A stretch of 63,948 nt of DNA, counting the filler, from Lenisia limosa (taxonomy: Eukaryota > Protista > Breviatea): the NCBI GenBank assembly GCA_001655205.1. It is 11 parts of 11 records of this genome, joined end to end, with 100 filler letters (N's around TTAATTAATTAA, not from the genome) between each part and the next. Parts side by side here need not be neighbours in the genome. Positions count along the whole stretch, not along the records: positions 43,707 to 52,079 come from LPNZ01009223.1; 10 more parts are not named here. One strand, written 5' to 3'. Shown here one piece after another: positions 3,601 through 51,955 of the stretch (positions are counted from its first letter, which is position 1; the number at the start of each line of letters is the position of its first letter). Below the pieces are notes generated by a model. The model had not been told where the DNA came from, searched no databases, and saw only the letters and a list, made by a program, of their open reading frames with translations. Made by a program: the position numbers and the translations under genes.

Positions 3601-6600
3601 ATTAAAGAGGTTAATTTCTGATAATGTATTCTGTGATCCTCATCCCCCAGATAAAAACGGAAGCAATCTTATTTACGACTTTGATTTTTTTCCCCAAGAA
3701 GCTTTGGAAGGTTTGTTGATATCATAACGGAATTTTCGTGTTGTTTTTCGTCGTCATCGATCTTCTTCACCTCCCCACCTTGCAACTCAACTCCCCTCTG
3801 ACCCGTCAGATACTTCGGTCCCCGTTACTATTGGCTTCAATGCCACTATTCTCGGCCACATTAAACTGTTCACTGCAGGTGTCATGAAGCTACATTGCAT
3901 GTACGCCTTTACCACAATTGTTATATCATCCACTTTTACAATGCAAAGAAACTGGAGAAGTTAAGGATTAGCATATCATTTATGCACTATCAAAACTTCC
4001 GTATCATATTGACTGAAGAAAAAGACTCCACTTGTTACTCACACCTTAGGTTTGATAACACTCCTTCACTCGCCAGAGTAAGTCCTAACGGGGAAATAAC
4101 CTGTGACCTTCCTCCCCAAACGTCTGACGTGACTAAGGTTGAACTTCTTTTCAAGGTTTGTCAAAGCAGCCCACTCTTTACGTTGGCATTGAAGAGAATC
4201 TACATACAGTACATATGATGTTACTCCAGTAAAAATCAAAGCAAATTCTAAGATAGATAGACATGGGACTTCACATCTGTTTTCAAACAACAGGAGTATA
4301 TTGATAAATATTTTGTATTAGTTTTGGCACTTTTATTGAACAAACACGTTTCTATATTTGACCCCCTAATCGCAATAGGGACGTAGAATCCGCCACATCA
4401 ATCCACGAGGATTCGCCATCAAAAGGATTGCCCACACCGTTGAACTGGATGACCTTAGTTTTTGGCCTGGTCGAAACGTCACAATAAAAGGAGGGGAATT
4501 TGTGGGTAATGTCACTGTTAATATGGTGGTGAGCGGCAAGTTTGATATCACTGCAAACGTGACTGTTGTCAATGCGACGCTTTTGGAGTTCACAGTTCCA
4601 AATGGCCTTCAAACCTACCCTGGACAGATGAGTGTAGTTTCCAAATTTGGGTAGGTAGGACTCTTTTTGTACTCCATGGATAGCGATAAAGACTTTTTTT
4701 GTCCAATATCGAGATTATTTTCACCTATTTATTTTTTTATGACCATTTAGAATGCCCTATTGTCCCGCGCAGAAAAATCGCATTTTCGCGGGATTTTCGC
4801 AGGAAAACAGTATTTTGGAGGATTTTTGCGGCGCTTCGCACCGCTCTGCACCATTTTATTTACCATTTTTTTTGTTGTTAAAATGTGAAACATCACCAGG
4901 TTTTGAATATTTTTTCGCTGCACGGGTAAATAGGGCATTTTTAAAATTAATATACATGTATATACTATATGCTGTCTGATTGCTGTTGGTTTTTTGTTAT
5001 TGATTTCCATTTACTTGTTCAGCGGAAATACCTATCAATCAGAAGACCTTTTGGTCAACTATTTTGAGGTTGGTGAAGCATTATTGGATACCATATATTG
5101 GGCTTGGGCTTCTCTTCGATCCCAAAAAGAATAAACTGCTCAATAAATGAGTATTTTTTCTTTGAGACAAATTAAAAGTAAATATTGGTTGAGTCAACCT
5201 TTCATCATTCAGCCTGCCTACATTACAGGCATCAACCCCGGGTCCATAGTGGCTAATGCGATTCCGGCGTACATCGATATTCAAGGAGCCAACTTCCCGA
5301 AAGCAAGCTCTATCGTTTGCTGTGTTCAAGGTGAGGTTTATCATTTGCTGGCTCATTTTATATGAAAAGGAGAAGTCTCGTAACTGCTGTTTATACATAT
5401 GTTTATTTGGTGGTTAGACCTTGTGCCTTGTTGAAAGCAAGAGTCATAAATCAAGGAATAACATGGGAGTAACTAAATCCTTTCCTCCAATGCCGACCAC
5501 TTAACCACGTATTGCAGAGTAATAAAGGGACTTGTCAACTCGCGAGCGGACTTTTTCCATAGCAAATCCGTAGCTCTCTGTAGAGAAATGCCATTTTCTA
5601 GTTCCAAGTACCCTTCACCCTTCATCTTCCAACGTTACCTTTATAGACAATTGTGCTGATGCTGAATACTTGAGCCAGGTGCTGGTCCTTTGCCCATTAC
5701 ACCCGTCACTTGCCTCTCTATGTTGGCTGCTGATATGACTGATATCTTTTTATACTTTTACATTGTCATATTTGCTGTATAGCGTCATCGAAAAATGAAA
5801 TTGCAATTCTGTTAGTGCTGGTCTATTTTACAAGGATAGTTATGTTTTATGGAATAAAAATTGTCGAAACAATGAAGTGTAAAAACAGTCACCAAACTCA
5901 ATTTAACATTTAAGATAATTGGTTATCGAGGATTGATTCGGAATTTTAGTTTTACACAACTAAATCAACTTTTTGACAACTTCATCTCCACAACAGTTTC
6001 CGCTGAAGTTACATTGACATTCGACAACACAGTGTTCCTTAAGTCTGACACGGTTTTGACCATCATAAGTTGGCAGGGAATCGGCTATAGCCCACATGAA
6101 TTACATGTAAAAATGTCCGTATAATATGTTTCCTTCCATTTTACCTTTTCTTTTATGAGGAGCTTATTACATCAAATCTCACTCATCGATGAAGTCTTTT
6201 GAATCTCCACTAAACCCCCAGGAACATTTACCCTGGAAGCGATTTCAACGTTTCCTTTACAATCGAGGAACTTTTGGCCGCTTGAGCCTCCTCCTCAGTT
6301 CAGAGTGGGCCGGTTTTGTGCTGTTTTATTGTCGATTGTGGTCAAAAGAGGCAAACAACCATTTTTGTCCCAGTTTTGGAGGAGCCATATCTCTAAAATT
6401 TATGTATTTGAAAACAGTTAGGTGATGTGATAAGTACACTATTATATATATATATAGTTAAAACCGCGAACATGATTAAAACCGCGAACAAAAAGGAGGC
6501 TTTTCTTTCAATTTTTGAGCCAATACGCTCCTTATTTACGCCTCTTTCGCATTTTTTGCAAATTATCGCCCGAAACACTCCTTTATACAGGGTTTTATTC

Positions 6601-43239: not shown

Positions 43240-43724
43240 GTTGGTTGGGTGATTTATTCTATCATCACTTTTTGGTCTTTTTAACTGTCATTTTCCACGC
43301 AATGATATGATACCTCATATCCCTCGTATGATAATTGACTGAAAAGTCTCAATGATACTCTGATACACTCGGGATAAACCCTCGAATAATCTGTAATGTT
43401 AATAAGCGTTTCTAGCATTTTTCGGGTTATTAGGGGGGGGGGGATCCCTTTTCAAACTCCGCTTTCATCTGGTTGGCGAATTTCGTGTTTTATTTGGCTG
43501 AAAAGGGGATATTACTGATCAACTTATAAAATAGAAAAATGCAACTTATCAGACACAAGAGGATATTGTCACTGGGTTTCTTTTATTCATTCGTCAAGAA
43601 GATATTNNNNNNNNNNNNNNNNNNNNNNNNNNNNNNNNNNNNNNNNNNNNTTAATTAATTAANNNNNNNNNNNNNNNNNNNNNNNNNNNNNNNNNNNNNN
43701 NNNNNNAAAATGTTCATTTGGCTT

Positions 43725-43790
43725 GTTTTCACAGATAGAGGAAAATTCACAGATATATGGACGGTGATAGAAATTTTTTTAAAAAAAATC
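43725..43790 (-). repeat. Family F repeat end
   Basis: Reverse complement of ccgtccatatatctgtgaattttcctctatctgtga, also at 46268-46335 and 48853-48912. Confidence 0.85.
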
Positions 43791-43819
43791 ACTTGATTTA
43801 ATTGATAATATCCTCCCAG

Positions 43820-43948
43820 TAGCTCGTCAGAACAAGGCTTCCCCCAAAAAGAAAGCTACCTCCCCCAAAAAAGCTACCAAAAGTATGTTACTTTGAAATG
43901 GTGTCGTTTTCTCATTTTGAATCGCCTGTCAAGAAGAAGGCAAAGTAG
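43820..43948 (+). CDS. Last exons of a protein with a histone-H1-like SPKK tail
   Basis: ARQNKASPKKKATSPKKATK, then KSPVKKKAK* if the 43883-43919 intron ends in TG. Confidence 0.6.
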
Positions 43949-44849
43949 CTTTTAGTCATCTTGTTTCCTTTTTTTCTTATGTTGTACATTATTCTATATT
44001 TTTTCCAGATTCCATTGCGTGAATGAGAAAATACCTCATATGGTTAAGTCCTATTCTGCTTTGTTGAGGGTAAATAATCTTAAACTGTTAATAGTGTATT
44101 TCTGTGCAGAGTTGATGTGTGTTGCAAGTATGATAATATTACTTTTGCTTTTCTTTCTTCATAAAACACTTGTGTGATATGTATATACCTTCAAAACTTG
44201 ACAACAAGGGTGCACTAGCCATAGAGAAGCCAACTTGAAGGATGAGAAGACGAAACTCATAAGCCAAGAGATAAGTAGTAAACTTGATTGAATACATACT
44301 GTTTTAACGGGATGCAAAAATCGATATAAGCAACTGATACAAGGGGAGACCAAAGTCGAAACGGTGGCTATACTTGACATCAGCATCAAGGAAAGGATTT
44401 GCGAGGGGAAGGAAACATCTAATTAACAACGATCAATCTGCAGACAATGTTTGAGTATCTATCTTGTTATATAGCCAGAAAAAAATACCATTTTGCTTGT
44501 AAAACAAACTGATTTTTAAAACTGAACTGGAGTGAACTGTGTCTCTTAGATTGTCTTAGAATACTTCTTTAAAAAACAGGAGGCTTGTCAGGACACTTTG
44601 ATTCAAATTTTTACTGAGATCTCCGAAATTTGTTCACTTTACTGCTCCCCCTCCTTCCTACCTTAATTATAATATCTTTTCCCTTAATCTACCCAAGCTA
44701 AACAGTGATTAAAAAAGAAAAATACAGAAAATTATTTCTTAAAACTGTCCACCGCAGGCCCTAAATCGTAGAAACTAAGTTACAAAATTTAATTGGACTT
44801 CCGCTTCTAGGTAAAGGTCAAAACGATCAATTCTTATCAATCCGAAAAG

Positions 44850-46240
44850 CCTTTGCAATGGGCACATGTGTCACTGGTAACAGAAATGAGAGATAATGAT
44901 GGAAGGGTAGCAAGTGTGAGACAATGGTTGAAGGAGTTTGAGAGCCGTCAGATGACAAACCAGGTTTGCTTTATCCCGTTGTGTTTTACCTCTTCTATTT
45001 TGCATCTTGTATACAGGGCTTCACTTCGGTTCAAAAAAAGACTGATTTTCTTGATAAATTCTCGAAAACTATCGATATTGTACTGGTCTTATTCGGACTG
45101 AAGGCCTTTGTATACTGTGCAGTAAATAACTAATCAGGTTTACCATTGTTGCTTGGTGTTATTTTTTAACATTATTTTCGCCTAAGCAAGGTCTAATTCA
45201 CAAGTCGTCAAGAAGCTAAAGATCATCAATTTGACTGATTCACTTATTGTTTCATGTCAGGGAGAAGAAGCAGGCTGCTGAGTAACTCAGCCGATTTCCC
45301 GTGGTGAGATGATCTGAGTCTCTGTGGACTCCCGCTGGTCGAATGTTTGGTGTCAAAAACTGAATGTCATGTGCCACTTTTCTAGAGATTTGGTTGGAAT
45401 TCAACTGATTCTCTCTACCATACTGGGAAAATGTTTGTTTGGATATAACGTGGCCTCAGCAGCTTTGGAACGTAGAATCTTCACTTATTTTTTCAAGTAT
45501 GATGATGGTTCTATCATAGTATGGAAAATGATTGTCCTCCAGGAGTTTGAATATTTGTTCGAATCAAATGGAAACTGGATCAGTCAGTATTCCGTAACCT
45601 GCATAGATGTCACTACTGGATTAAATGAAGGTTTGAAAGTGAAAAAATATATTATATTTTTGAGTGCGTTCGCCGTTGGTATCAATCTGGATGGTGCTAT
45701 CTTTCAACAGGTAATCAATCAACCAAGCTGATCATTCTACTAATTGTATTGTAAAAAGAGAGGGGGGGGGGGGAGAGAAAACACCTGTATTGCATGGGGG
45801 TAGTAGAATATATCTGGGGAGATCATCCTGTCAAGTATATTTGCAGGTTNNNNNNNNNNNNNNNNNNNNNNNNNNNNNNNNNNNNNNNNNNNNNNNNNNN
45901 NNNNNNNNNNNNNNNNNNNNNNNNNNNNNNNCAATCTCCCGCTCCTCGATTGACAAAAACACTTGATTGCGCTATTCAAAAGAATATCTTATTGTCAATG
46001 TGACCTGCACGGGCATTTTGGGTACAATCGTTCACGAAATTATACGGTTGCCGTGTGGCTTTTATATGTATGTTATGAATCTAAATCAGTTTCAAGATAA
46101 ATGTGTATCTGGTCGGCGATATATATGTGAGTCCTCAAATCTCCAAACATCATTCCAAATTCACCGGACACATCAAAACTCCCGGACAGCTTGAAGTTGA
46201 CACCTTGTAGAGGACAGATACAAGAGAAATGGACCTCCTA
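44850..46240 (+). CDS. Multi-exon gene of unknown function, possibly a beta-propeller
   Basis: Exons PLQWAHVSLVTEMRDNDGRVASVRQWLKEFESRQ; SNSQVVKKLKIINLTDSLIVSCQG; GSIIVWKMIVLQEF...YSVTCIDVTTG; AFAVGINLDGAIFQQ. Confidence 0.45.
45016..45106. mobile_element. MITE family A copy, intronic
   Basis: gggcttcacttcggttcaaaaaaagactgattttcttgataaattctcgaaaactatcgatattg. Confidence 0.85.
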
Positions 46241-46267
46241 ATGTTCCCCAACTTTTTTATTCCATTT

Positions 46268-46645
46268 TGAACATATCACACACCGTCCATATATCTGTGA
46301 ATTTTCCTCTATCTGTGATTTTTTTGAAATATACGGACAATTTTGATAAAAAAAATGGCATATATTAACTAAGAGAATTGTCATAACACTCTTGTTGCTC
46401 ACAAAAATGACAATNNNNNNNNNNNNNNNNNNNNNNNNNNNNNNNNNNNNNNNNNNNNNNNNNNNNNNNNNNNNNNNNNNNNNNNNNNNNNNNNNNNNNN
46501 NNNNNNNNNNNNNNNNNNNNNNNNNNNNNNNNNNNNNNNNNNNNNNNNNNNNNNNNNNNNNNNNNNNNNNNNNNNNNNNNNNNNNNNNNNNNNNNNNNNN
46601 NNNNNNNNNNNNNNNNNNNNNNNNNNNNNNNNNNNNNNNNNNNNN
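46268..46645 (+). repeat. Family F repeat (largely masked)
   Basis: aacatatcacac-accgtccatatatctgtgaattttcctctatctgtgattttttgaaata, followed by an N run. Confidence 0.75.
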
Positions 46646-46922
46646 TGTCAAAAATTCGTAAATTTGTTCTCCCGAAGGTCCCCCTCTTGCCTTTTCACAG
46701 GATTTTTAATTGAATCTTACCCTCTTTTTAGTCTTTTTTTTTCTCAAAAAGGGTGAATATCGTAAACAAAGAGATAAATTGCAGATTTGCTTGAGAAAAC
46801 CAGAATTAGCGAGAGAGAAAAAAAACCAGAATTTTGAACGGCCGCATATAGCAGATATATATGATATACTATATATACTATATATATCTACTTTTTCTGT
46901 AAATTCCACTGTCATGTTCTAG

Positions 46923-48823
46923 CTTGGATCAAGAGTTGTAGATTTTTCCTTGGGAGGTTCACTGAAAAGACGTTTTCCACTTAATAACTTAACACTCATG
47001 ACAACCTCAGGTGCAAAAGGATCCAAGGTTAATTTTTCTCAGGTACCATTTATTTCTCAATTTTTTTATTTTGATTTCTTGTCTTCTGGGTCAGCAAGAA
47101 CTGGAAGGTAGAAGAGTTCCTCGAATGGTAAACGGTAAAACTCTCCCTTGTTTTGAAGAGTATGACCTTGATGTGAGAGCTGGTGGGTTCATTGGTGACA
47201 GGTTCTTAAACAGTATATTTATTCCGATTTTTTTCAGGGGTGCGCCCCCAGGAGTACTACTTCCATTGCATGGCTGGTCGAGAAGGTTTAATTGATACTG
47301 CTGTTAAAACTGCTAATTCTGGTTACCTTCAAAGGTGTCTTATTAAAAATATGGAGGTGTGTATGCGTTTGATATTATTTTCTAGAGTCTTAGCGTCCAA
47401 TATGATGATACTGTTAGGGATGCAGATGGGTCTGTTATTCAATTCAGGTTTGTTCTGCGCTTCTTTTTTTTTTTTTGTGTTTACCAAATTCAGATATGGA
47501 GAAGACAGTATAGACGTAGTAAAATCCAGATGGCTGAAAGAATTCCACTTTCAGGCTTCTAATCTAGGGTCTGTTTCCACTAAGTATCAATTGGGACAGG
47601 TATTTTTCTTCTCTTGGGCTTCTGTCTCCGACTCTCTAGGTTAATGATTTAAAGAGATCCTCAAAATTATTAAAAGCTGGTCTAAGGAAACCTGAAAAGT
47701 ATCTCCCTGCTCTGTCACATTTAAATGTTTGATATATATATATATCATGTTGCCTTCTGGTCATATTGGAGCAGTATCCGAGCATTTTGCTTCTGCTTTG
47801 GACTTCTTCCTTCAAAGTGAATTTACTAATTATGGGTTTTTGTTTTGGTTTTTTTTTATGCAGCGAAACGTTTAGTCAAGAGGAATTTCGTTGGCTAATG
47901 TTTTCCAAGTATCACCAAAGCCTTGTACAGGCAGGTGAAGCTGTAGGACTGCTTGCTGCGCAATCAATTGGTGAACCTTCGACACAGATGACTCTGAATA
48001 GTTTTTTTTTTGTTTTATATAATCTGCGTTTCACCTTGCCGGATTTGGTGGTGTTAATGTTACCCTGGGAATTCCGCGTCTTCGGGAGATTCTAATGACT
48101 GGAGGAGAGAATCTCTCAACTCCTGTAATGACACTGCCGTTATTTAAATCGATATCAAAACATGATGTTTTTTTATTGTTGTTATTTTTTGGCGTCTTTA
48201 TTTTCTCGTAATCTCAAAAGGGTCTCCCTGTACAATGTAGTTGATCAAGTTTTTTCAAGTTCCCTAATTTGTGCTCGCTTGAAAAAAAAACAAATTTCAG
48301 TGAAATACTGTCAACGAAACGGTAATTTCTTCATTTATCTTGAATTTACATATTAATTGATATGATTCTTTTTGAGATATTAAATATCTTGATCTCTTTT
48401 CGCAAAAACACAACAAATTTTTGGTGTAATATATCATATGTTAGTCAGTGACCGTATTCAATAATGAGTACTTTATCGATATAGGCATATATGTTCATTT
48501 ATCATATACCCTCGGGAAAATGAGAGTCATATTTTTCGTTTTTGGGGAATGTGGCCTTTTAAACGGTTTGTGTGTTTTTGAGTAGAGTTGGTTTTGACCT
48601 GATTAGTTGCATTATGTTGAATTCTTTTTACGTAGCAACAAAACCTTACTTCTCCTTTTAGAAAGAATAGAAAAGAAACACTATAACTTAATTACGCCTT
48701 TACAATAGAAACTGAAACATCATATTGGACATCTTCTTGGCTCTGCTTCACTGAATTTTGTAGTAAGAAATGTTATTTTTCTGACGAATTTGCTTGAGAT
48801 CACCATTTCTCAAATTTCATCGG
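46923..48823 (+). CDS. POLR1A: RNA polymerase I largest subunit, central fragment (regions F-G); contains GT-TG introns
   Basis: Spliced: [162 protein letters not shown]. The GKTLP and [17 protein letters not shown] motifs match the Pol I type. Confidence 0.93.
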
Positions 48824-48852
48824 GTATAAGATAGCTCAATCCCCTCAGGAAC

Positions 48853-49290
48853 AACATATCACACCGTCCATATATCTGTGAATTTTCCTCTATCTGTGAT
48901 TTTTTTGAAATANNNNNNNNNNNNNNNNNNNNNNNNNNNNNNNNNNNNNNNNNNNNNNNNNNNNNNNNNNNNNNNNNNNNNNNNNNNNNNNNNNNNNNNN
49001 NNNNNNNNNNNNNNNNNNNNNNNNNNNNNNNNNNNNNNNNNNNNNNNNNNNNNNNNNNNNNNNNNNNNNNNNNNNNNNNNNNNNNNNNNNNNNNNNNNNN
49101 NNNNNNNNNNNNNNNNNNNNNNNNNNNNNNNNNNNNNNNNNNNNNNNNNNNNNNNNNNNNNNNNNNNNNNNNNNNNNNNNNNNNNNNNNNNNNNNNNNNN
49201 NNNNNNNNNNNNNNNNNNNTATATACCCTAATGAAAATGTCATATTTTTCTGGAAATTCGTCATATTCTTTCAAAACAACCATATTTTCA
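48853..49290 (+). repeat. Family F repeat (largely masked)
   Basis: Same 60-bp start as the 46268 copy, then an N run, then atataccctaatgaaaatgtcatattttt (motif also at 48503-48548 and 50068-50110). Confidence 0.75.
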
Positions 49291-49931: not shown

Positions 49932-50500
49932 GCTTCTCGCGGAATGGCATTGGGCATTTTCTTGGTTGTTTTTGCGGAGGTTCCGAGGGACGAACGAGGC
50001 ATAGCCAAGTGAGAACCAAGGAACCTCCTTAAATCAATCGAAAATTTCCGAGGGATTATTGCATAACATATACCCTCGGGAAAATGAGAGTCATATTTTA
50101 CGTTTTGGGGTCTTTTTTTTTTTTTATCGCTCTGATCGAACTATTAGAAGCATTTACTGGACAAAGGGGATAAAGATGGTATTTGACCAAATTAGGTTCT
50201 TTTCATGATAAAATGAAGAATTGCCATGCTTACCTCGTGATGCCAACTCCCCTGAAAAGGGCCTCTTTGTTGATTTAATGAAAGAAGAATTTGTTTCAAC
50301 GCAAGTTGAAGAAGATCAGCTTTCGGAGAAAATTTCTTGTACCTGTGTTCCCTTCTTTTTCAAATAGTCAAATACGTTGCTTACATCGACAAAAGATAAA
50401 ACTAAGCGTCACCATGTCAGGTGCTTTGTTCATTTCTATGGTCCCTTAGGAAGGCCAGGAGGCGAGTTTTGGTAAACTATAATTTCCGTCCTCCAAAGCC
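49932..50500 (+). CDS. Exons of an unknown gene, paralog 2 of the inverted pair
   Basis: GSFHDKMKNCHAYL, 23-nt intron (50237-50259), then GLFVDLMKEEFVSTQVEED; upstream exon ASRGMALGIFLVVFAEVPRDERGIAK. Confidence 0.5.
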
Positions 50501-50972: not shown

Positions 50973-51955
50973 ATGGATAGAAGTACACCAGAAGAAGCGA
51001 TAAGGATGGAGACGAAAAGAATGGATGAAGATATGAGGATACTGTTGAAGAAGGTGAGGTTGATAAAAAGACTGAAGAAGAACGGAGGACGCACAGAAGA
51101 AGTGGCAGAAGATACGATGAAAGAAGATAATGAATGGATGAAGGAAGTAAGAAGAAGATGAATGAAGTAGGCATAGAAGGGACAGGAGACGTATTCCGCA
51201 TATTGGCAGGCATGGGAATGAAAGGTGAAGAAGCAATGAGGAAGTTGATGAAGAAAGCAATGAGAAGAAGATGGAAGAAGGCTGCAATTGAGAAGAAGTC
51301 GCTGAGAGAAGTGGTATGGATATGTGGAGGAAAAGAAGAGGAAGAGAAGAGTACCCGCAACTATTTGGAGAAAGAGAAGAAAGGAAGGAAGAAGATGAAG
51401 AACGAAAAGAGAGGGAGTTGAGGTTAAATGAAGAAGGAAGAAGGAAGAACGCAGAAGATAAAAGAAGATGCATGGTATGTGGAGTAGTAGGAGTAAGAGG
51501 TACTACTCACATACTGGAAGAATGCAAGGAAATGGAAGAAGAAAGAAGATGGATGGAAGAGAGAATATTGACCAGAATTGGAAGAGAAGTGAATGATTAT
51601 GATATGGCAAGAAGAAGGATGGACGAGGTTGTGAAGTGGAGAGGAGAAGAAGAGCTAAGAATAAGGACTAAAGGATGGTTTAAAGATAAGGAAAGAAGAA
51701 AAGAAGCAAGAAAGATGTATGCAAAGTGGAGGAAGAAAAGACAGAATGAAGAAGTATGGAAAAGAAGGCAGGAGGAGAAGAGAGAGTATCAAGATGAAGA
51801 TGAAGAGGAGGAGAATAGGAATATGGACGAAGAAAGAGAAGCAAGAGAAAGACGACAAGCTGAAGGAGAAGAAGAAGAAGGAGATTTTTTTTCTACCTCA
51901 ACTAGAATAAAATGAATCCAAAAAAAAGTCCAAAAAAAATAAAAATAAAATACAT
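50973..51955 (+). mobile_element. 5'-truncated, frameshifted non-LTR retrotransposon (ORF2 C-terminus with CCHC zinc knuckle)
   Basis: Intronless purine-rich reading frames: STPEEAIRMET...LKKVRLIKRL (typical post-RT motif) and CMVCG...TTHILEEC (C-x2-C...H-x4-C). Two frameshifts and an A-rich 3' tail. Confidence 0.75.

What the first reader, a model, noticed from the sequence alone, without database searches (positions are those of the whole stretch)
48001..48026. Cleanest GT-TG case: the junction rebuilds the invariant QMTLNTFH motif
The exon ends CTG AAT A, the intron is gttttttttttgttttatataatctg (26 nt, no AG), and the next exon starts CG TTT CAC, so A+CG gives Thr and [15 protein letters not shown]. 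The first downstream AG (cgggag) gives the wrong frame and a stop, so there is no canonical solution. The end taatctg puts a putative branch A 5 nt from the 3' end, the same spacing as ctaacaag in the candidate last NAA10 intron.
Basis: partly seen in the sequence, partly recalled or inferred. Interest (0 to 1): 0.85.

Follow-up and report, generated by a model that had tools for sequence, protein, structure and literature searches.

The report
Tiny GT...TG intron in RNA polymerase I gene
A 26-base insert that splits an invariant motif of the RNA polymerase I largest-subunit gene is most likely a real ultra-short intron that ends in TG instead of the near-universal AG, and three more introns of the same gene do the same, which would mean this organism's splicing machinery has relaxed one of its most conserved rules.

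Summary
At 48001-48026, a 26-nt T-rich segment (GT...CTG, no AG inside) interrupts the trigger-loop motif QMTLNTFH of an RPA1/POLR1A gene. Removing exactly these bases joins A+CG into the Thr codon and restores the motif. No frame-preserving GT/GC-AG solution exists within 45 nt.

The insert is real DNA: an independent ENA contig is 100% identical, and a DNA-like run holds all sampled 31-mers. A polyA RNA run holds only 7 of 14 words across the site. Exon-only RNA predicts 8.2 and unspliced RNA predicts 14.

A nine-intron model gives a 385-aa ORF that aligns end to end with RPA1 homologues (50-56% identity). Five introns end in AG. Four end in TG (31, 26, 26 and 25 nt), each at a site where the only AG alternative deletes conserved residues or breaks the frame.

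Best reading, at about 0.8: U2-type ultra-short introns with a UG 3' splice site. Frameshift, translational bypass, IRE1-type excision, U12-type splicing, assembly error and pseudogene are each disfavoured.

I found no published report of frequent GT-TG introns in any lineage. The organism is unidentified; its RPA1 groups with fungi on a long branch.

The parts
46923..48321 (+). Visible part of the RNA polymerase I largest-subunit gene (RPA1/POLR1A): 10 exons and 9 introns, about residues 900-1290 of a full-length homologue. The 3' limit of the last exon is uncertain (48321-48350).
   Evidence: Pfam Rpb1 domains 4 and 5. PDB hits to RPA1/RPA190. The spliced model gives a 385-aa ORF that aligns as one HSP at 50-56% identity with RPA1 homologues.
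47864..48000 (+). Exon upstream of the finding. It ends ...[10 protein letters not shown] plus the first base (A) of the Thr codon.
48001..48026 (+). The finding: a 26-nt insert, GTTTTTTTTTTGTTTTATATAATCTG, read as a phase-1 ultra-short intron with GT at the 5' end and TG at the 3' end. GC is 15% and there is no internal AG.
   Evidence: Identical in contig L003. The RNA run lacks about the expected number of intron-overlapping 31-mers.
48021..48022 (+). Candidate branch-point adenosines (positions -6 and -5 from the 3' end, within TAATCTG).
   Evidence: Inference only. All nine introns have an A 5-11 nt upstream of the 3' end (read).
48020..48022 (+). TAA stop in the reading frame of the downstream exon, inside the insert. 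It blocks any frameshift on the T10 run from producing a continuous protein.
   Evidence: Three-frame translation and sequence.
48027..48166 (+). Exon downstream of the finding. It starts CG (completing the Thr codon), then [46 protein letters not shown].
48087..48088 (+). First AG downstream of the insert. It is unusable as an acceptor: wrong frame, early stop, and loss of 20 conserved residues.
47043..47073 (+). Second TG-ending intron (31 nt, GTACC...ATTTTG). The in-frame GT-AG alternative (47043-47094) would delete the conserved ISCLLGQ.
47727..47752 (+). Third TG-ending intron (26 nt, GTTTGATATATATATATATCATGTTG). A 23-nt variant ending at 47749 also ends in TG but leaves one residue more than all homologues. 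The GT-AG alternative (47727-47782) deletes [11 protein letters not shown].
48167..48191 (+). Fourth TG-ending intron (25 nt, GTTTTTTTATTGTTGTTATTTTTTG). It gives HD|[10 protein letters not shown], with an 18-residue spacing equal to that of homologues. The GT-AG alternatives (48178 or 48181 to 48220) shorten the segment by 5-6 residues.
47213..47237 (+). Canonical GT-AG intron, 25 nt.
47357..47385 (+). Canonical GT-AG intron, 29 nt.
47448..47493 (+). Canonical GT-AG intron, 46 nt. It contains an unused internal TTTTTG about 30 nt from its 5' end.
47600..47639 (+). Canonical GT-AG intron, 40 nt. Its boundaries rest on frame only, because the region is poorly conserved.
47836..47863 (+). Canonical GT-AG intron, 28 nt.

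Best explanation
The 26 nt at 48001-48026 are a genuine ultra-short (U2-type) spliceosomal intron of the RPA1 gene. It has a normal GU 5' end and a non-canonical UG 3' splice site. It is excised so that A (48000) joins CG (48027-48028), giving the Thr of the invariant trigger-loop motif QMTLNTFH.

It is one of at least four such GT...TG introns (25-31 nt) among nine introns in this stretch of the gene. In this organism, therefore, the 3' splice site of tiny, T-rich, AG-less introns can be YUG as well as YAG.

Shown: the segment is in the DNA; only its exact removal gives the conserved protein; no canonical solution exists; polyA RNA contigs carry the flanking exons but roughly the exon-only share of 31-mers.

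Inferred: the removal is spliceosomal. An A 5-6 nt upstream of the 3' end serves as branch point. The second step accepts the first suitably spaced Y-U/A-G downstream of that A. The terminal G would keep the G(+1)-G(-1) contact known from spliceosome structures, and U would replace A at -2. This last mechanistic point rests on my general knowledge of spliceosome structure and was not tested here.
For: (1) Sequence and frame. (2) Pfam profile positions 92 and 94 flank the insert, so one residue is missing; one search shows the same in an alignment. (3) There is no frame-preserving GT/GC-AG pair within +-45 nt. (4) QMTLNTFH is intact in 330 of 334 homologues. (5) The nine-intron model gives a 385-aa stop-free ORF that aligns as one HSP with homologues, without gaps at the TG junctions. 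(6) At each of the three other TG-ending introns, the AG alternative deletes conserved residues. (7) Intron-like composition: GC is 15-19% in the TG introns against 40% in exons, and introns are 59% T overall. (8) DNA confirmed: contig L003 is 100% identical, and the DNA-like run X2 holds 1.00 of the words. (9) The RNA run X1 holds 0.50 (7/14) of the words over 47931-48096. The exon-only expectation is 8.2, unspliced RNA would give 14, and one exon alone would give 4.1 with P(>=7)=0.07. Over 46900-48700 it holds 0.43, against an exon-only ceiling of 0.47-0.48. (10) Two distant homologues (L001:4288-4345 and L002:1848-1922) have a canonical GT-AG intron in the same Thr codon, one nucleotide downstream.
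Against: No transcript-derived protein of this organism is in the protein databases. The k-mer evidence rests on 14 sampled words and cannot fix the exact junction. A TTTTTG inside the 46-nt AG intron is not used productively, so TG alone does not define a 3' site. The first ~900 residues of RPA1 are not in the piece, and the 3' continuation is only weakly detectable, so I cannot show that this locus encodes the full functional gene. All DNA evidence may derive from one sample.
Confidence: 0.8

Rival explanations
1. This locus is a pseudogene or defective allele whose 3' splice sites mutated from AG to TG. The functional RPA1, and the RNA detected, would come from another copy.
For: The N-terminal ~900 residues of RPA1 are absent from the piece. 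The gene segment is flanked by repeats and scaffold gaps. The RNA words cannot be assigned to a locus.
Against: The 385 codons carry no stop or frameshift and are 50-56% identical to homologues. Four independent A-to-T changes exactly at position -2 of four introns, with no other lesion, are very unlikely. The RNA run matches the exons of this locus word for word. A probable next exon lies about 2.6 kb downstream on the same strand.
Confidence: 0.07
2. This is a sequencing or assembly error: the true acceptors are AG (for example AATCAG), or the insert is an artefact.
For: Two of the four TG ends follow T runs (ATTTTG, TTTTTTG), where a base-calling slip is conceivable. Both assemblies may derive from the same reads.
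Against: An independent SPAdes contig at about 84x coverage is 100% identical over 2.26 kb. Run X2 holds all 14 sampled words. The TG at 48025-48026 follows C, and the one at 47751-47752 follows GT, so neither sits on a homopolymer. An error would have to hit the same position of four introns.
Confidence: 0.04
3. The insert stays in the mRNA and is dealt with during translation (ribosomal frameshift on the T10 run, or a hop), or it is removed by a non-spliceosomal nuclease/ligase route like the 26-nt XBP1/HAC1 intron.
For: The insert contains a T10 slippery run. It has the same length (26 nt) as the XBP1 intron, and its 3' boundary reads CUG|C.
Against: A TAA at 48020-48022 lies in the target frame, so a frameshift in the T run terminates. 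A hop from AAT to the downstream AAT lands in the wrong frame. Read-through would put about 9 foreign residues into an invariant catalytic motif. The 5' boundary AAUA|GUUU does not fit the IRE1 CNG|CNGN site, and the fold has no twin hairpins (z = -1.4). Three other inserts of the same gene share GT...TG ends, which fits one splicing rule and not four recoding signals. The RNA contigs lack about the intron's share of words.
Confidence: 0.04
4. It is a U12-type (minor spliceosome) intron, a class known to tolerate varied terminal dinucleotides.
For: Surveys report non-AG 3' ends among U12-type introns (PMC1557818, listed).
Against: The 5' end GTTTTT lacks the RTATCCTT consensus, and no TCCTTRAY branch site is present. 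At 26 nt it is far below known U12 intron sizes. Four of nine introns being minor-type would be unprecedented.
Confidence: 0.02

Closest known systems
Ultra-short canonical introns of dicyemids and myxobolid myxozoans (also Paramecium, Stentor and nucleomorphs)
   Same: Length is 25-31 nt. Dicyema introns are 26.2 +/- 1.9 nt (PMC2222250), with a median of 27 nt (PMC6543705); myxobolid medians are 22-27 nt (PMC13644364). The 5' signal is minimal (GT plus little else), introns are dense, and there are weakly conserved A residues shortly before the 3' end.
   Different: Those introns are described as ending in AG, and their annotations used canonical-only predictors. Here four of nine end in TG. 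The host may not be an animal: its RPA1 groups with fungi at 93/94 support and carries AGFGG instead of the animal AGRGEM, although an animal placement is only borderline rejected (p-AU 0.056).
Sporadic GT-TG introns in human, Drosophila and plant annotations
   Same: The terminal dinucleotides are the same, and a U2-like context is presumed (PMC4176328, PMC4528330, PMC1557818).
   Different: There they are isolated exceptions among 10^5 introns. Here they are 44% of the introns in one essential gene, all ultra-short and lacking any AG.
Lineage-wide non-canonical splicing in tunicates (Fritillaria, Oikopleura), Amoebophrya, and euglenozoans/diplonemids
   Same: A whole lineage departs from the GT-AG rule. 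In tunicates this is linked to a changed U2AF (PMC13326754; also PMC7789003 and PMC12621601).
   Different: Those lineages use other boundary pairs (AG-AC, GA-AG and so on), often with extended base pairing or transposon origin. Here the 5' GT is kept and only the A at -2 of the 3' site is replaced by T.
Yeast 3' splice-site mutants (UAG to UUG) and second-step fidelity factors
   Same: The change is A-to-U at position -2 with the terminal G kept. From my own knowledge of the splicing literature, not checked here, such mutants retain some second-step activity and are suppressed by PRP8 alleles.
   Different: Those are engineered, inefficient substrates. Here UG would be a natural, constitutive site in an essential gene.

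Membership tests
U2-type spliceosomal intron | GU at the 5' end | tested here: met
   GT at 48001-48002, and GT at the 5' end of all nine introns of the model.
U2-type spliceosomal intron | AG at the 3' end | tested here: not met
   The intron ends CTG (48024-48026) and has no AG inside it. Three other introns of the gene also end in TG. This is the point of interest: it works like a U2-type intron but breaks this rule.
U2-type spliceosomal intron | Branch-point adenosine upstream of the 3' site, followed by a pyrimidine-rich stretch | tested here: inconclusive
   A residues lie at -5/-6 (48021-48022). All nine introns have an A 5-11 nt from the 3' end, and introns are 59% T. No lariat data are available.
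U2-type spliceosomal intron | Absent from mature mRNA, with exons joined exactly at the boundaries | tested here: inconclusive
   The polyA RNA run holds 7 of 14 sampled words across the site (exon-only 8.2, unspliced 14), and 0.43 over 1.8 kb against an exon-only ceiling of 0.47-0.48.
U2-type spliceosomal intron | Removal restores an uninterrupted, conserved reading frame | tested here: met
   A+CG gives Thr and restores QMTLNTFH. The 385-aa model aligns end to end with homologues.
U12-type (minor) intron | 5' consensus /RTATCCTT and branch site TCCTTRAY | tested here: not met
   The 5' end is GTTTTTTTTT, and no TCCTTRAY occurs in the 26 nt.
IRE1/RtcB-type unconventional intron (XBP1/HAC1) | Both cleavage sites lie in 7-nt loops (CNG|CNGN) of twin stem-loops | tested here: not met
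   The 5' boundary is AAUA|GUUU. The predicted fold is one weak hairpin with z = -1.4.
Programmed ribosomal frameshift or translational bypass | An open target frame after the slip, or matched take-off and landing codons that restore the frame | tested here: not met
   TAA at 48020-48022 lies in the target frame. The downstream AAT (48021-48023) lands out of frame.
RNA polymerase I largest subunit (RPA1/POLR1A), the host gene | Rpb1 domains 4 and 5 with the trigger-loop motif; best matches are Pol I rather than Pol II or Pol III subunits | tested here: met
   PF05000 and PF04998 hits. The best PDB matches are RPA1/RPA190 chains 7aoc_A, 4c2m_A and 7ob9_A. Identity to named fungal RPA1 proteins is 50-56%.

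The most novel reading that the evidence does not exclude
In this organism UG is a regular, constitutive 3' splice site. A large fraction (tens of percent) of its ultra-short introns genome-wide would be GU...UG. That would imply that AG recognition by U2AF35 and second-step proofreading have been relaxed or re-tuned, and that canonical-only gene prediction has systematically mis-annotated its genes. If the host really is a fungal relative, it would also be the first intron-dense holomycotan lineage with introns of about 26 nt.
Probability: 0.5. Interest if true: 0.85.

Novelty: new variant of a known kind. Interest (0 to 1): 0.66.

Why it matters
The terminal AG of introns is among the most conserved signals in eukaryotic gene expression. 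A natural system in which nearly half the introns of an essential gene use UG would give a direct handle on three questions: how the 3' splice site is chosen in introns too short for a normal branch-point-to-AG scan, what the A at -2 contributes to the second catalytic step, and how U2AF35 co-evolves with its target. There is also a practical consequence. Gene predictors and spliced aligners that allow only GT-AG, GC-AG and AT-AC would break or truncate genes such as this RPA1, which has no canonical solution at 48001-48026. Proteome completeness and intron statistics for this genome, and perhaps for other ultra-short-intron genomes, may therefore be biased.

Tried and rejected
There is therefore no direct read evidence.

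(3) I looked for a transcript-derived protein of the same organism. I searched by words from the upstream exon among proteins of 66-210 aa, by HMMER against 1.8 billion representatives with the downstream exon, and by profile searches with scaffold sequences for 221-703 aa and 584-1858 aa. A local BLAST followed. Only the genomic read-through ORF P0001 is from this organism. P0121 looked promising but is a duplicated plant protein.

(4) The spliced junction is absent from the JGI metagenome contigs. The exon itself is absent too, so this negative says nothing.

(5) My first hand-drawn model had a 47-nt intron at 47817-47863, which broke the frame. It is replaced by the 28-nt intron 47836-47863.

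(6) Alignment A1, made of all exon fragments, was misaligned and discarded.

(7) I first suspected a dicyemid or myxozoan host because of the intron size and a GC of 36-37%. The RPA1 tree and the AGFGG motif point instead to fungi, and an animal placement is only borderline (p-AU 0.056). The host is left unresolved.

(8) Mikrocytids are excluded as host, because their introns are 16-17 nt.

(9) A ciliate-style IES was rejected: there are no TA boundaries, no in-frame TAA or TAG in the exons, and the neighbouring introns are spliceosomal.

(10) Rfam found nothing in the piece. Pfam and the ESM Atlas found nothing in the flanking ORFs.

(11) Literature searches for GT-TG, GU-UG and non-canonical splicing in dicyemids, orthonectids and aphelids found no description of this phenomenon.

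Full report
THE OBSERVATION

The sequence at 47985-48040 reads CAG ATG ACT CTG AAT A / gttttttttttgttttatataatctg / CG TTT CAC CTT GCC GGA. The lower-case segment is exactly 48001-48026 (26 nt). It starts GT, ends TG and has no AG inside.

- The upstream exon translates to ...[15 protein letters not shown] and matches Pfam Rpb1 domain 5 up to profile position 92.
- The downstream exon ([23 protein letters not shown]...) matches from position 94, so exactly one residue is missing.
- The best solved-structure matches are the Pol I largest subunits of S. pombe, S. cerevisiae and human.
- Joining A (48000) to CG (48027-48028) gives ACG, which is Thr, and restores QMTLNTFH. That motif is intact in 330 of 334 homologous proteins I retrieved.
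- The boundaries cannot slide, because the flanking bases differ.
- The first downstream AG (48087-48088) gives the wrong frame, an early stop, and loss of 20 conserved residues.
- Enumerating donors and acceptors within +-45 nt found no frame-preserving GT/GC-AG pair.

IS THE DNA REAL?

The protein search returned the genomic read-through ORF (P0001). Its contig, a SPAdes node of an ENA assembly at about 84x coverage (L003), is 100% identical to the window over 43715-45849 and 46646-48907, including the insert, and 98.8% identical over 45932-46414. It also closes two of the window's N gaps. A DNA-like run (X2) holds 0.91 and 1.00 of the sampled 31-mers. The two assemblies may share reads, so this rules out an assembler artefact but not a library-level one.

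THE GENE AROUND IT

Using homologues as a guide, I built a model of ten exons and nine introns between 46923 and about 48350. It gives a 385-codon ORF without stops. The ORF aligns as a single HSP, at 50-56% identity, with RPA1 proteins of many organisms, with no gaps at the critical junctions.

Five introns are GT-AG (25, 29, 46, 40 and 28 nt). Four are GT...TG, and none of these contains an AG:

| Intron | Length |
|---|---|
| 47043-47073 | 31 nt |
| 47727-47752 | 26 nt |
| 48001-48026 | 26 nt |
| 48167-48191 | 25 nt |

For the three additional TG introns an in-frame GT-AG alternative exists. Each alternative would delete conserved residues: ISCLLGQ at the first, [11 protein letters not shown] at the second, and 5-6 residues at the last, which would break the 18-residue spacing shared with homologues. 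The intron at 48001-48026 has no canonical alternative at all, so it is indeed the cleanest case.

Introns are 26% GC and 59% T, against 40% GC in exons. All nine lengths are non-multiples of three.

RNA EVIDENCE

The k-mer index gave indirect evidence.

- Over 46900-48700, the polyA RNA run X1 holds 0.43 of the sampled words. An RNA containing only the model's exons could hold at most 0.47-0.48.
- Over 47931-48096, which is 70 nt of each flanking exon plus the insert, X1 holds 7 of 14 words and X2 holds 14 of 14.
- The expectations for that stretch are 8.2 for exon-only RNA, 14 for unspliced RNA, and 4.1 if only one exon were present (P of 7 or more = 0.07).

The RNA therefore carries both exons but not the words that overlap the insert. 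This supports removal but cannot fix the exact junction. No transcript-derived protein of this organism exists in the protein collections searched. The JGI contigs hold neither the junction nor the exon.

COMPARATIVE EVIDENCE

Two distant homologues from metagenomic and Logan contigs have a canonical GT-AG intron in the same Thr codon, one nucleotide downstream. These are L001:4288-4345 (58 nt) and L002:1848-1922 (75 nt). An intron at this spot is therefore not unusual. Only its 3' end is.

ALTERNATIVES

- **Frameshift on the T10 run.** It would run into a TAA (48020-48022) in the target frame.
- **Translational hop from AAT to the downstream AAT.** It lands out of frame.
- **Read-through.** It would put about nine foreign residues into the trigger loop.
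- **IRE1/XBP1-type excision.** The length, 26 nt, is the same. However, the 5' boundary does not fit CNG|CNGN and the fold shows no twin hairpins (z = -1.4).
- **U12-type intron.** The consensus sequences are absent.
- **Pseudogene with four acceptors independently mutated A-to-T and no other lesion.** This is very unlikely, but I cannot exclude a second locus. The first ~900 residues of RPA1 are not in the piece. The continuation is detectable only weakly, about 2.6 kb downstream at about 50988-51074.
- **Base-calling error.** It is conceivable only for the two TG ends that follow T runs, not for CTG at 48024-48026.

MECHANISM (INFERRED)

All nine introns, whether they end in AG or TG, have an A 5-11 nt from the 3' end. 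In the finding these are A48021 and A48022, at -6 and -5. The 28-nt AG intron has its only non-terminal A at -6 and skips the TG that immediately follows it. The 46-nt AG intron skips an internal TTTTTG that lies upstream of its A-rich stretch.

This fits a 3' site defined as the first Y-(A/U)-G a few nucleotides downstream of the branch A. It does not fit TG being recognised wherever it occurs. The terminal G is kept and only position -2 changes. From general knowledge of spliceosome structure, the terminal G is the contact with the 5' G in the second step.

THE HOST

Intron sizes and GC content resemble those reported for Dicyema and myxobolids (PMC2222250, PMC6543705, PMC6736024, PMC13644364). 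The RPA1 segment, however, sits on a very long branch inside the fungal cluster (93/94 support). It carries AGFGG, like the fungal AGFGA, where animals and plants have AGRGEM. Forcing it to group with the two animal sequences costs 16 log-likelihood units (p-AU 0.056). I leave the lineage open.

NOVELTY

The papers I could search mention GT-TG only as a rare exception in human, fly and plant annotations. The ultra-short-intron papers describe AG ends from canonical-only annotation. I found no description of a lineage with frequent GU...UG introns. I cannot exclude that the genome paper of this unidentified organism mentions it.

I rate the finding a new variant of a known kind. My confidence is 0.8 that the intron is real. 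I put about 0.5 on UG being a common 3' site genome-wide.

Noticed in passing
window 47043-47073, 47727-47752, 48167-48191: Three further GT...TG introns (31, 26 and 25 nt) occur in the same RPA1 gene. Each lacks any AG and each is needed to keep conserved residues. That makes 4 of 9 introns non-AG.
   Followed up: yes
window 47212/47238 (junction of the 25-nt GT-AG intron 47213-47237): The canonical junction A|...|GG gives Arg (AGG) at a position where six homologues all have Gly (FLTGI against FLNRV here). Keeping Gly would need AG...CA boundaries. This is either a real substitution or another odd splice.
   Followed up: partly
all nine introns, 47043-48191: None of the nine intron lengths (31, 25, 29, 46, 40, 26, 28, 26, 25) is a multiple of three. 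The chance of this is about (2/3)^9 = 0.026. It recalls the selection against 3n introns described for Paramecium, where retention must trigger a premature stop.
   Followed up: partly
window 47448-47493: The 46-nt GT-AG intron contains TTTTTTTTG about 30 nt from its 5' end. This looks like the 3' ends of the TG introns, but using it would break the frame. TG is therefore not sufficient, and position relative to the A-rich stretch seems to matter.
   Followed up: partly
window 43729-43766, 46281-46318, 48862-48899; L003:15-52, 2492-2529, 2889-2926, 5146-5183: A 38-63-nt repeat, in both orientations, sits at contig ends next to the N gaps. Contig L003 shows that the 82-N gap (45850-45931) is really 7 nt and the 231-N gap (46415-46645) is really 305 nt. 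Another repeat pair lies at 48500-48550 and 50064-50110.
   Followed up: partly
window 50988-51074 (+) and 51292-51912 (+): There is a weak match (E about 4) to the RPA1 segment that follows the last modelled exon. After it comes a strongly purine-skewed, K/E/R-rich 207-codon ORF that could be the charged insertion of RPA1. This suggests an intron of about 2.6 kb filled with repeats and a gap. It is not established.
   Followed up: partly
window 44413-44327 (-): A weak RPA1-like stretch (SFPSQILSLMLMSSIATVSTLVSPCISCL, E 0.2-0.9) spans the exon junction ...SQ|ISCL without the 31-nt intron. It could be a decayed retro-copy, or it could be chance.
   Followed up: no
L001:4288-4345 and L002:1848-1922: Two GC-rich, unidentified eukaryotic contigs carry a canonical GT-AG intron in phase 2 of the same Thr codon of QMTLNTFH, one nucleotide from the position in the window. 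Many fungal-like contigs instead have an intron after FHFAGFGA.
   Followed up: partly
window 43707-46900: No trace of the first ~900 residues of RPA1 (domains 1-3) appears upstream on either strand, by tblastn with a full-length homologue. ORFs there have no Pfam or Atlas relatives. The 5' part of the gene must lie beyond the piece.
   Followed up: partly
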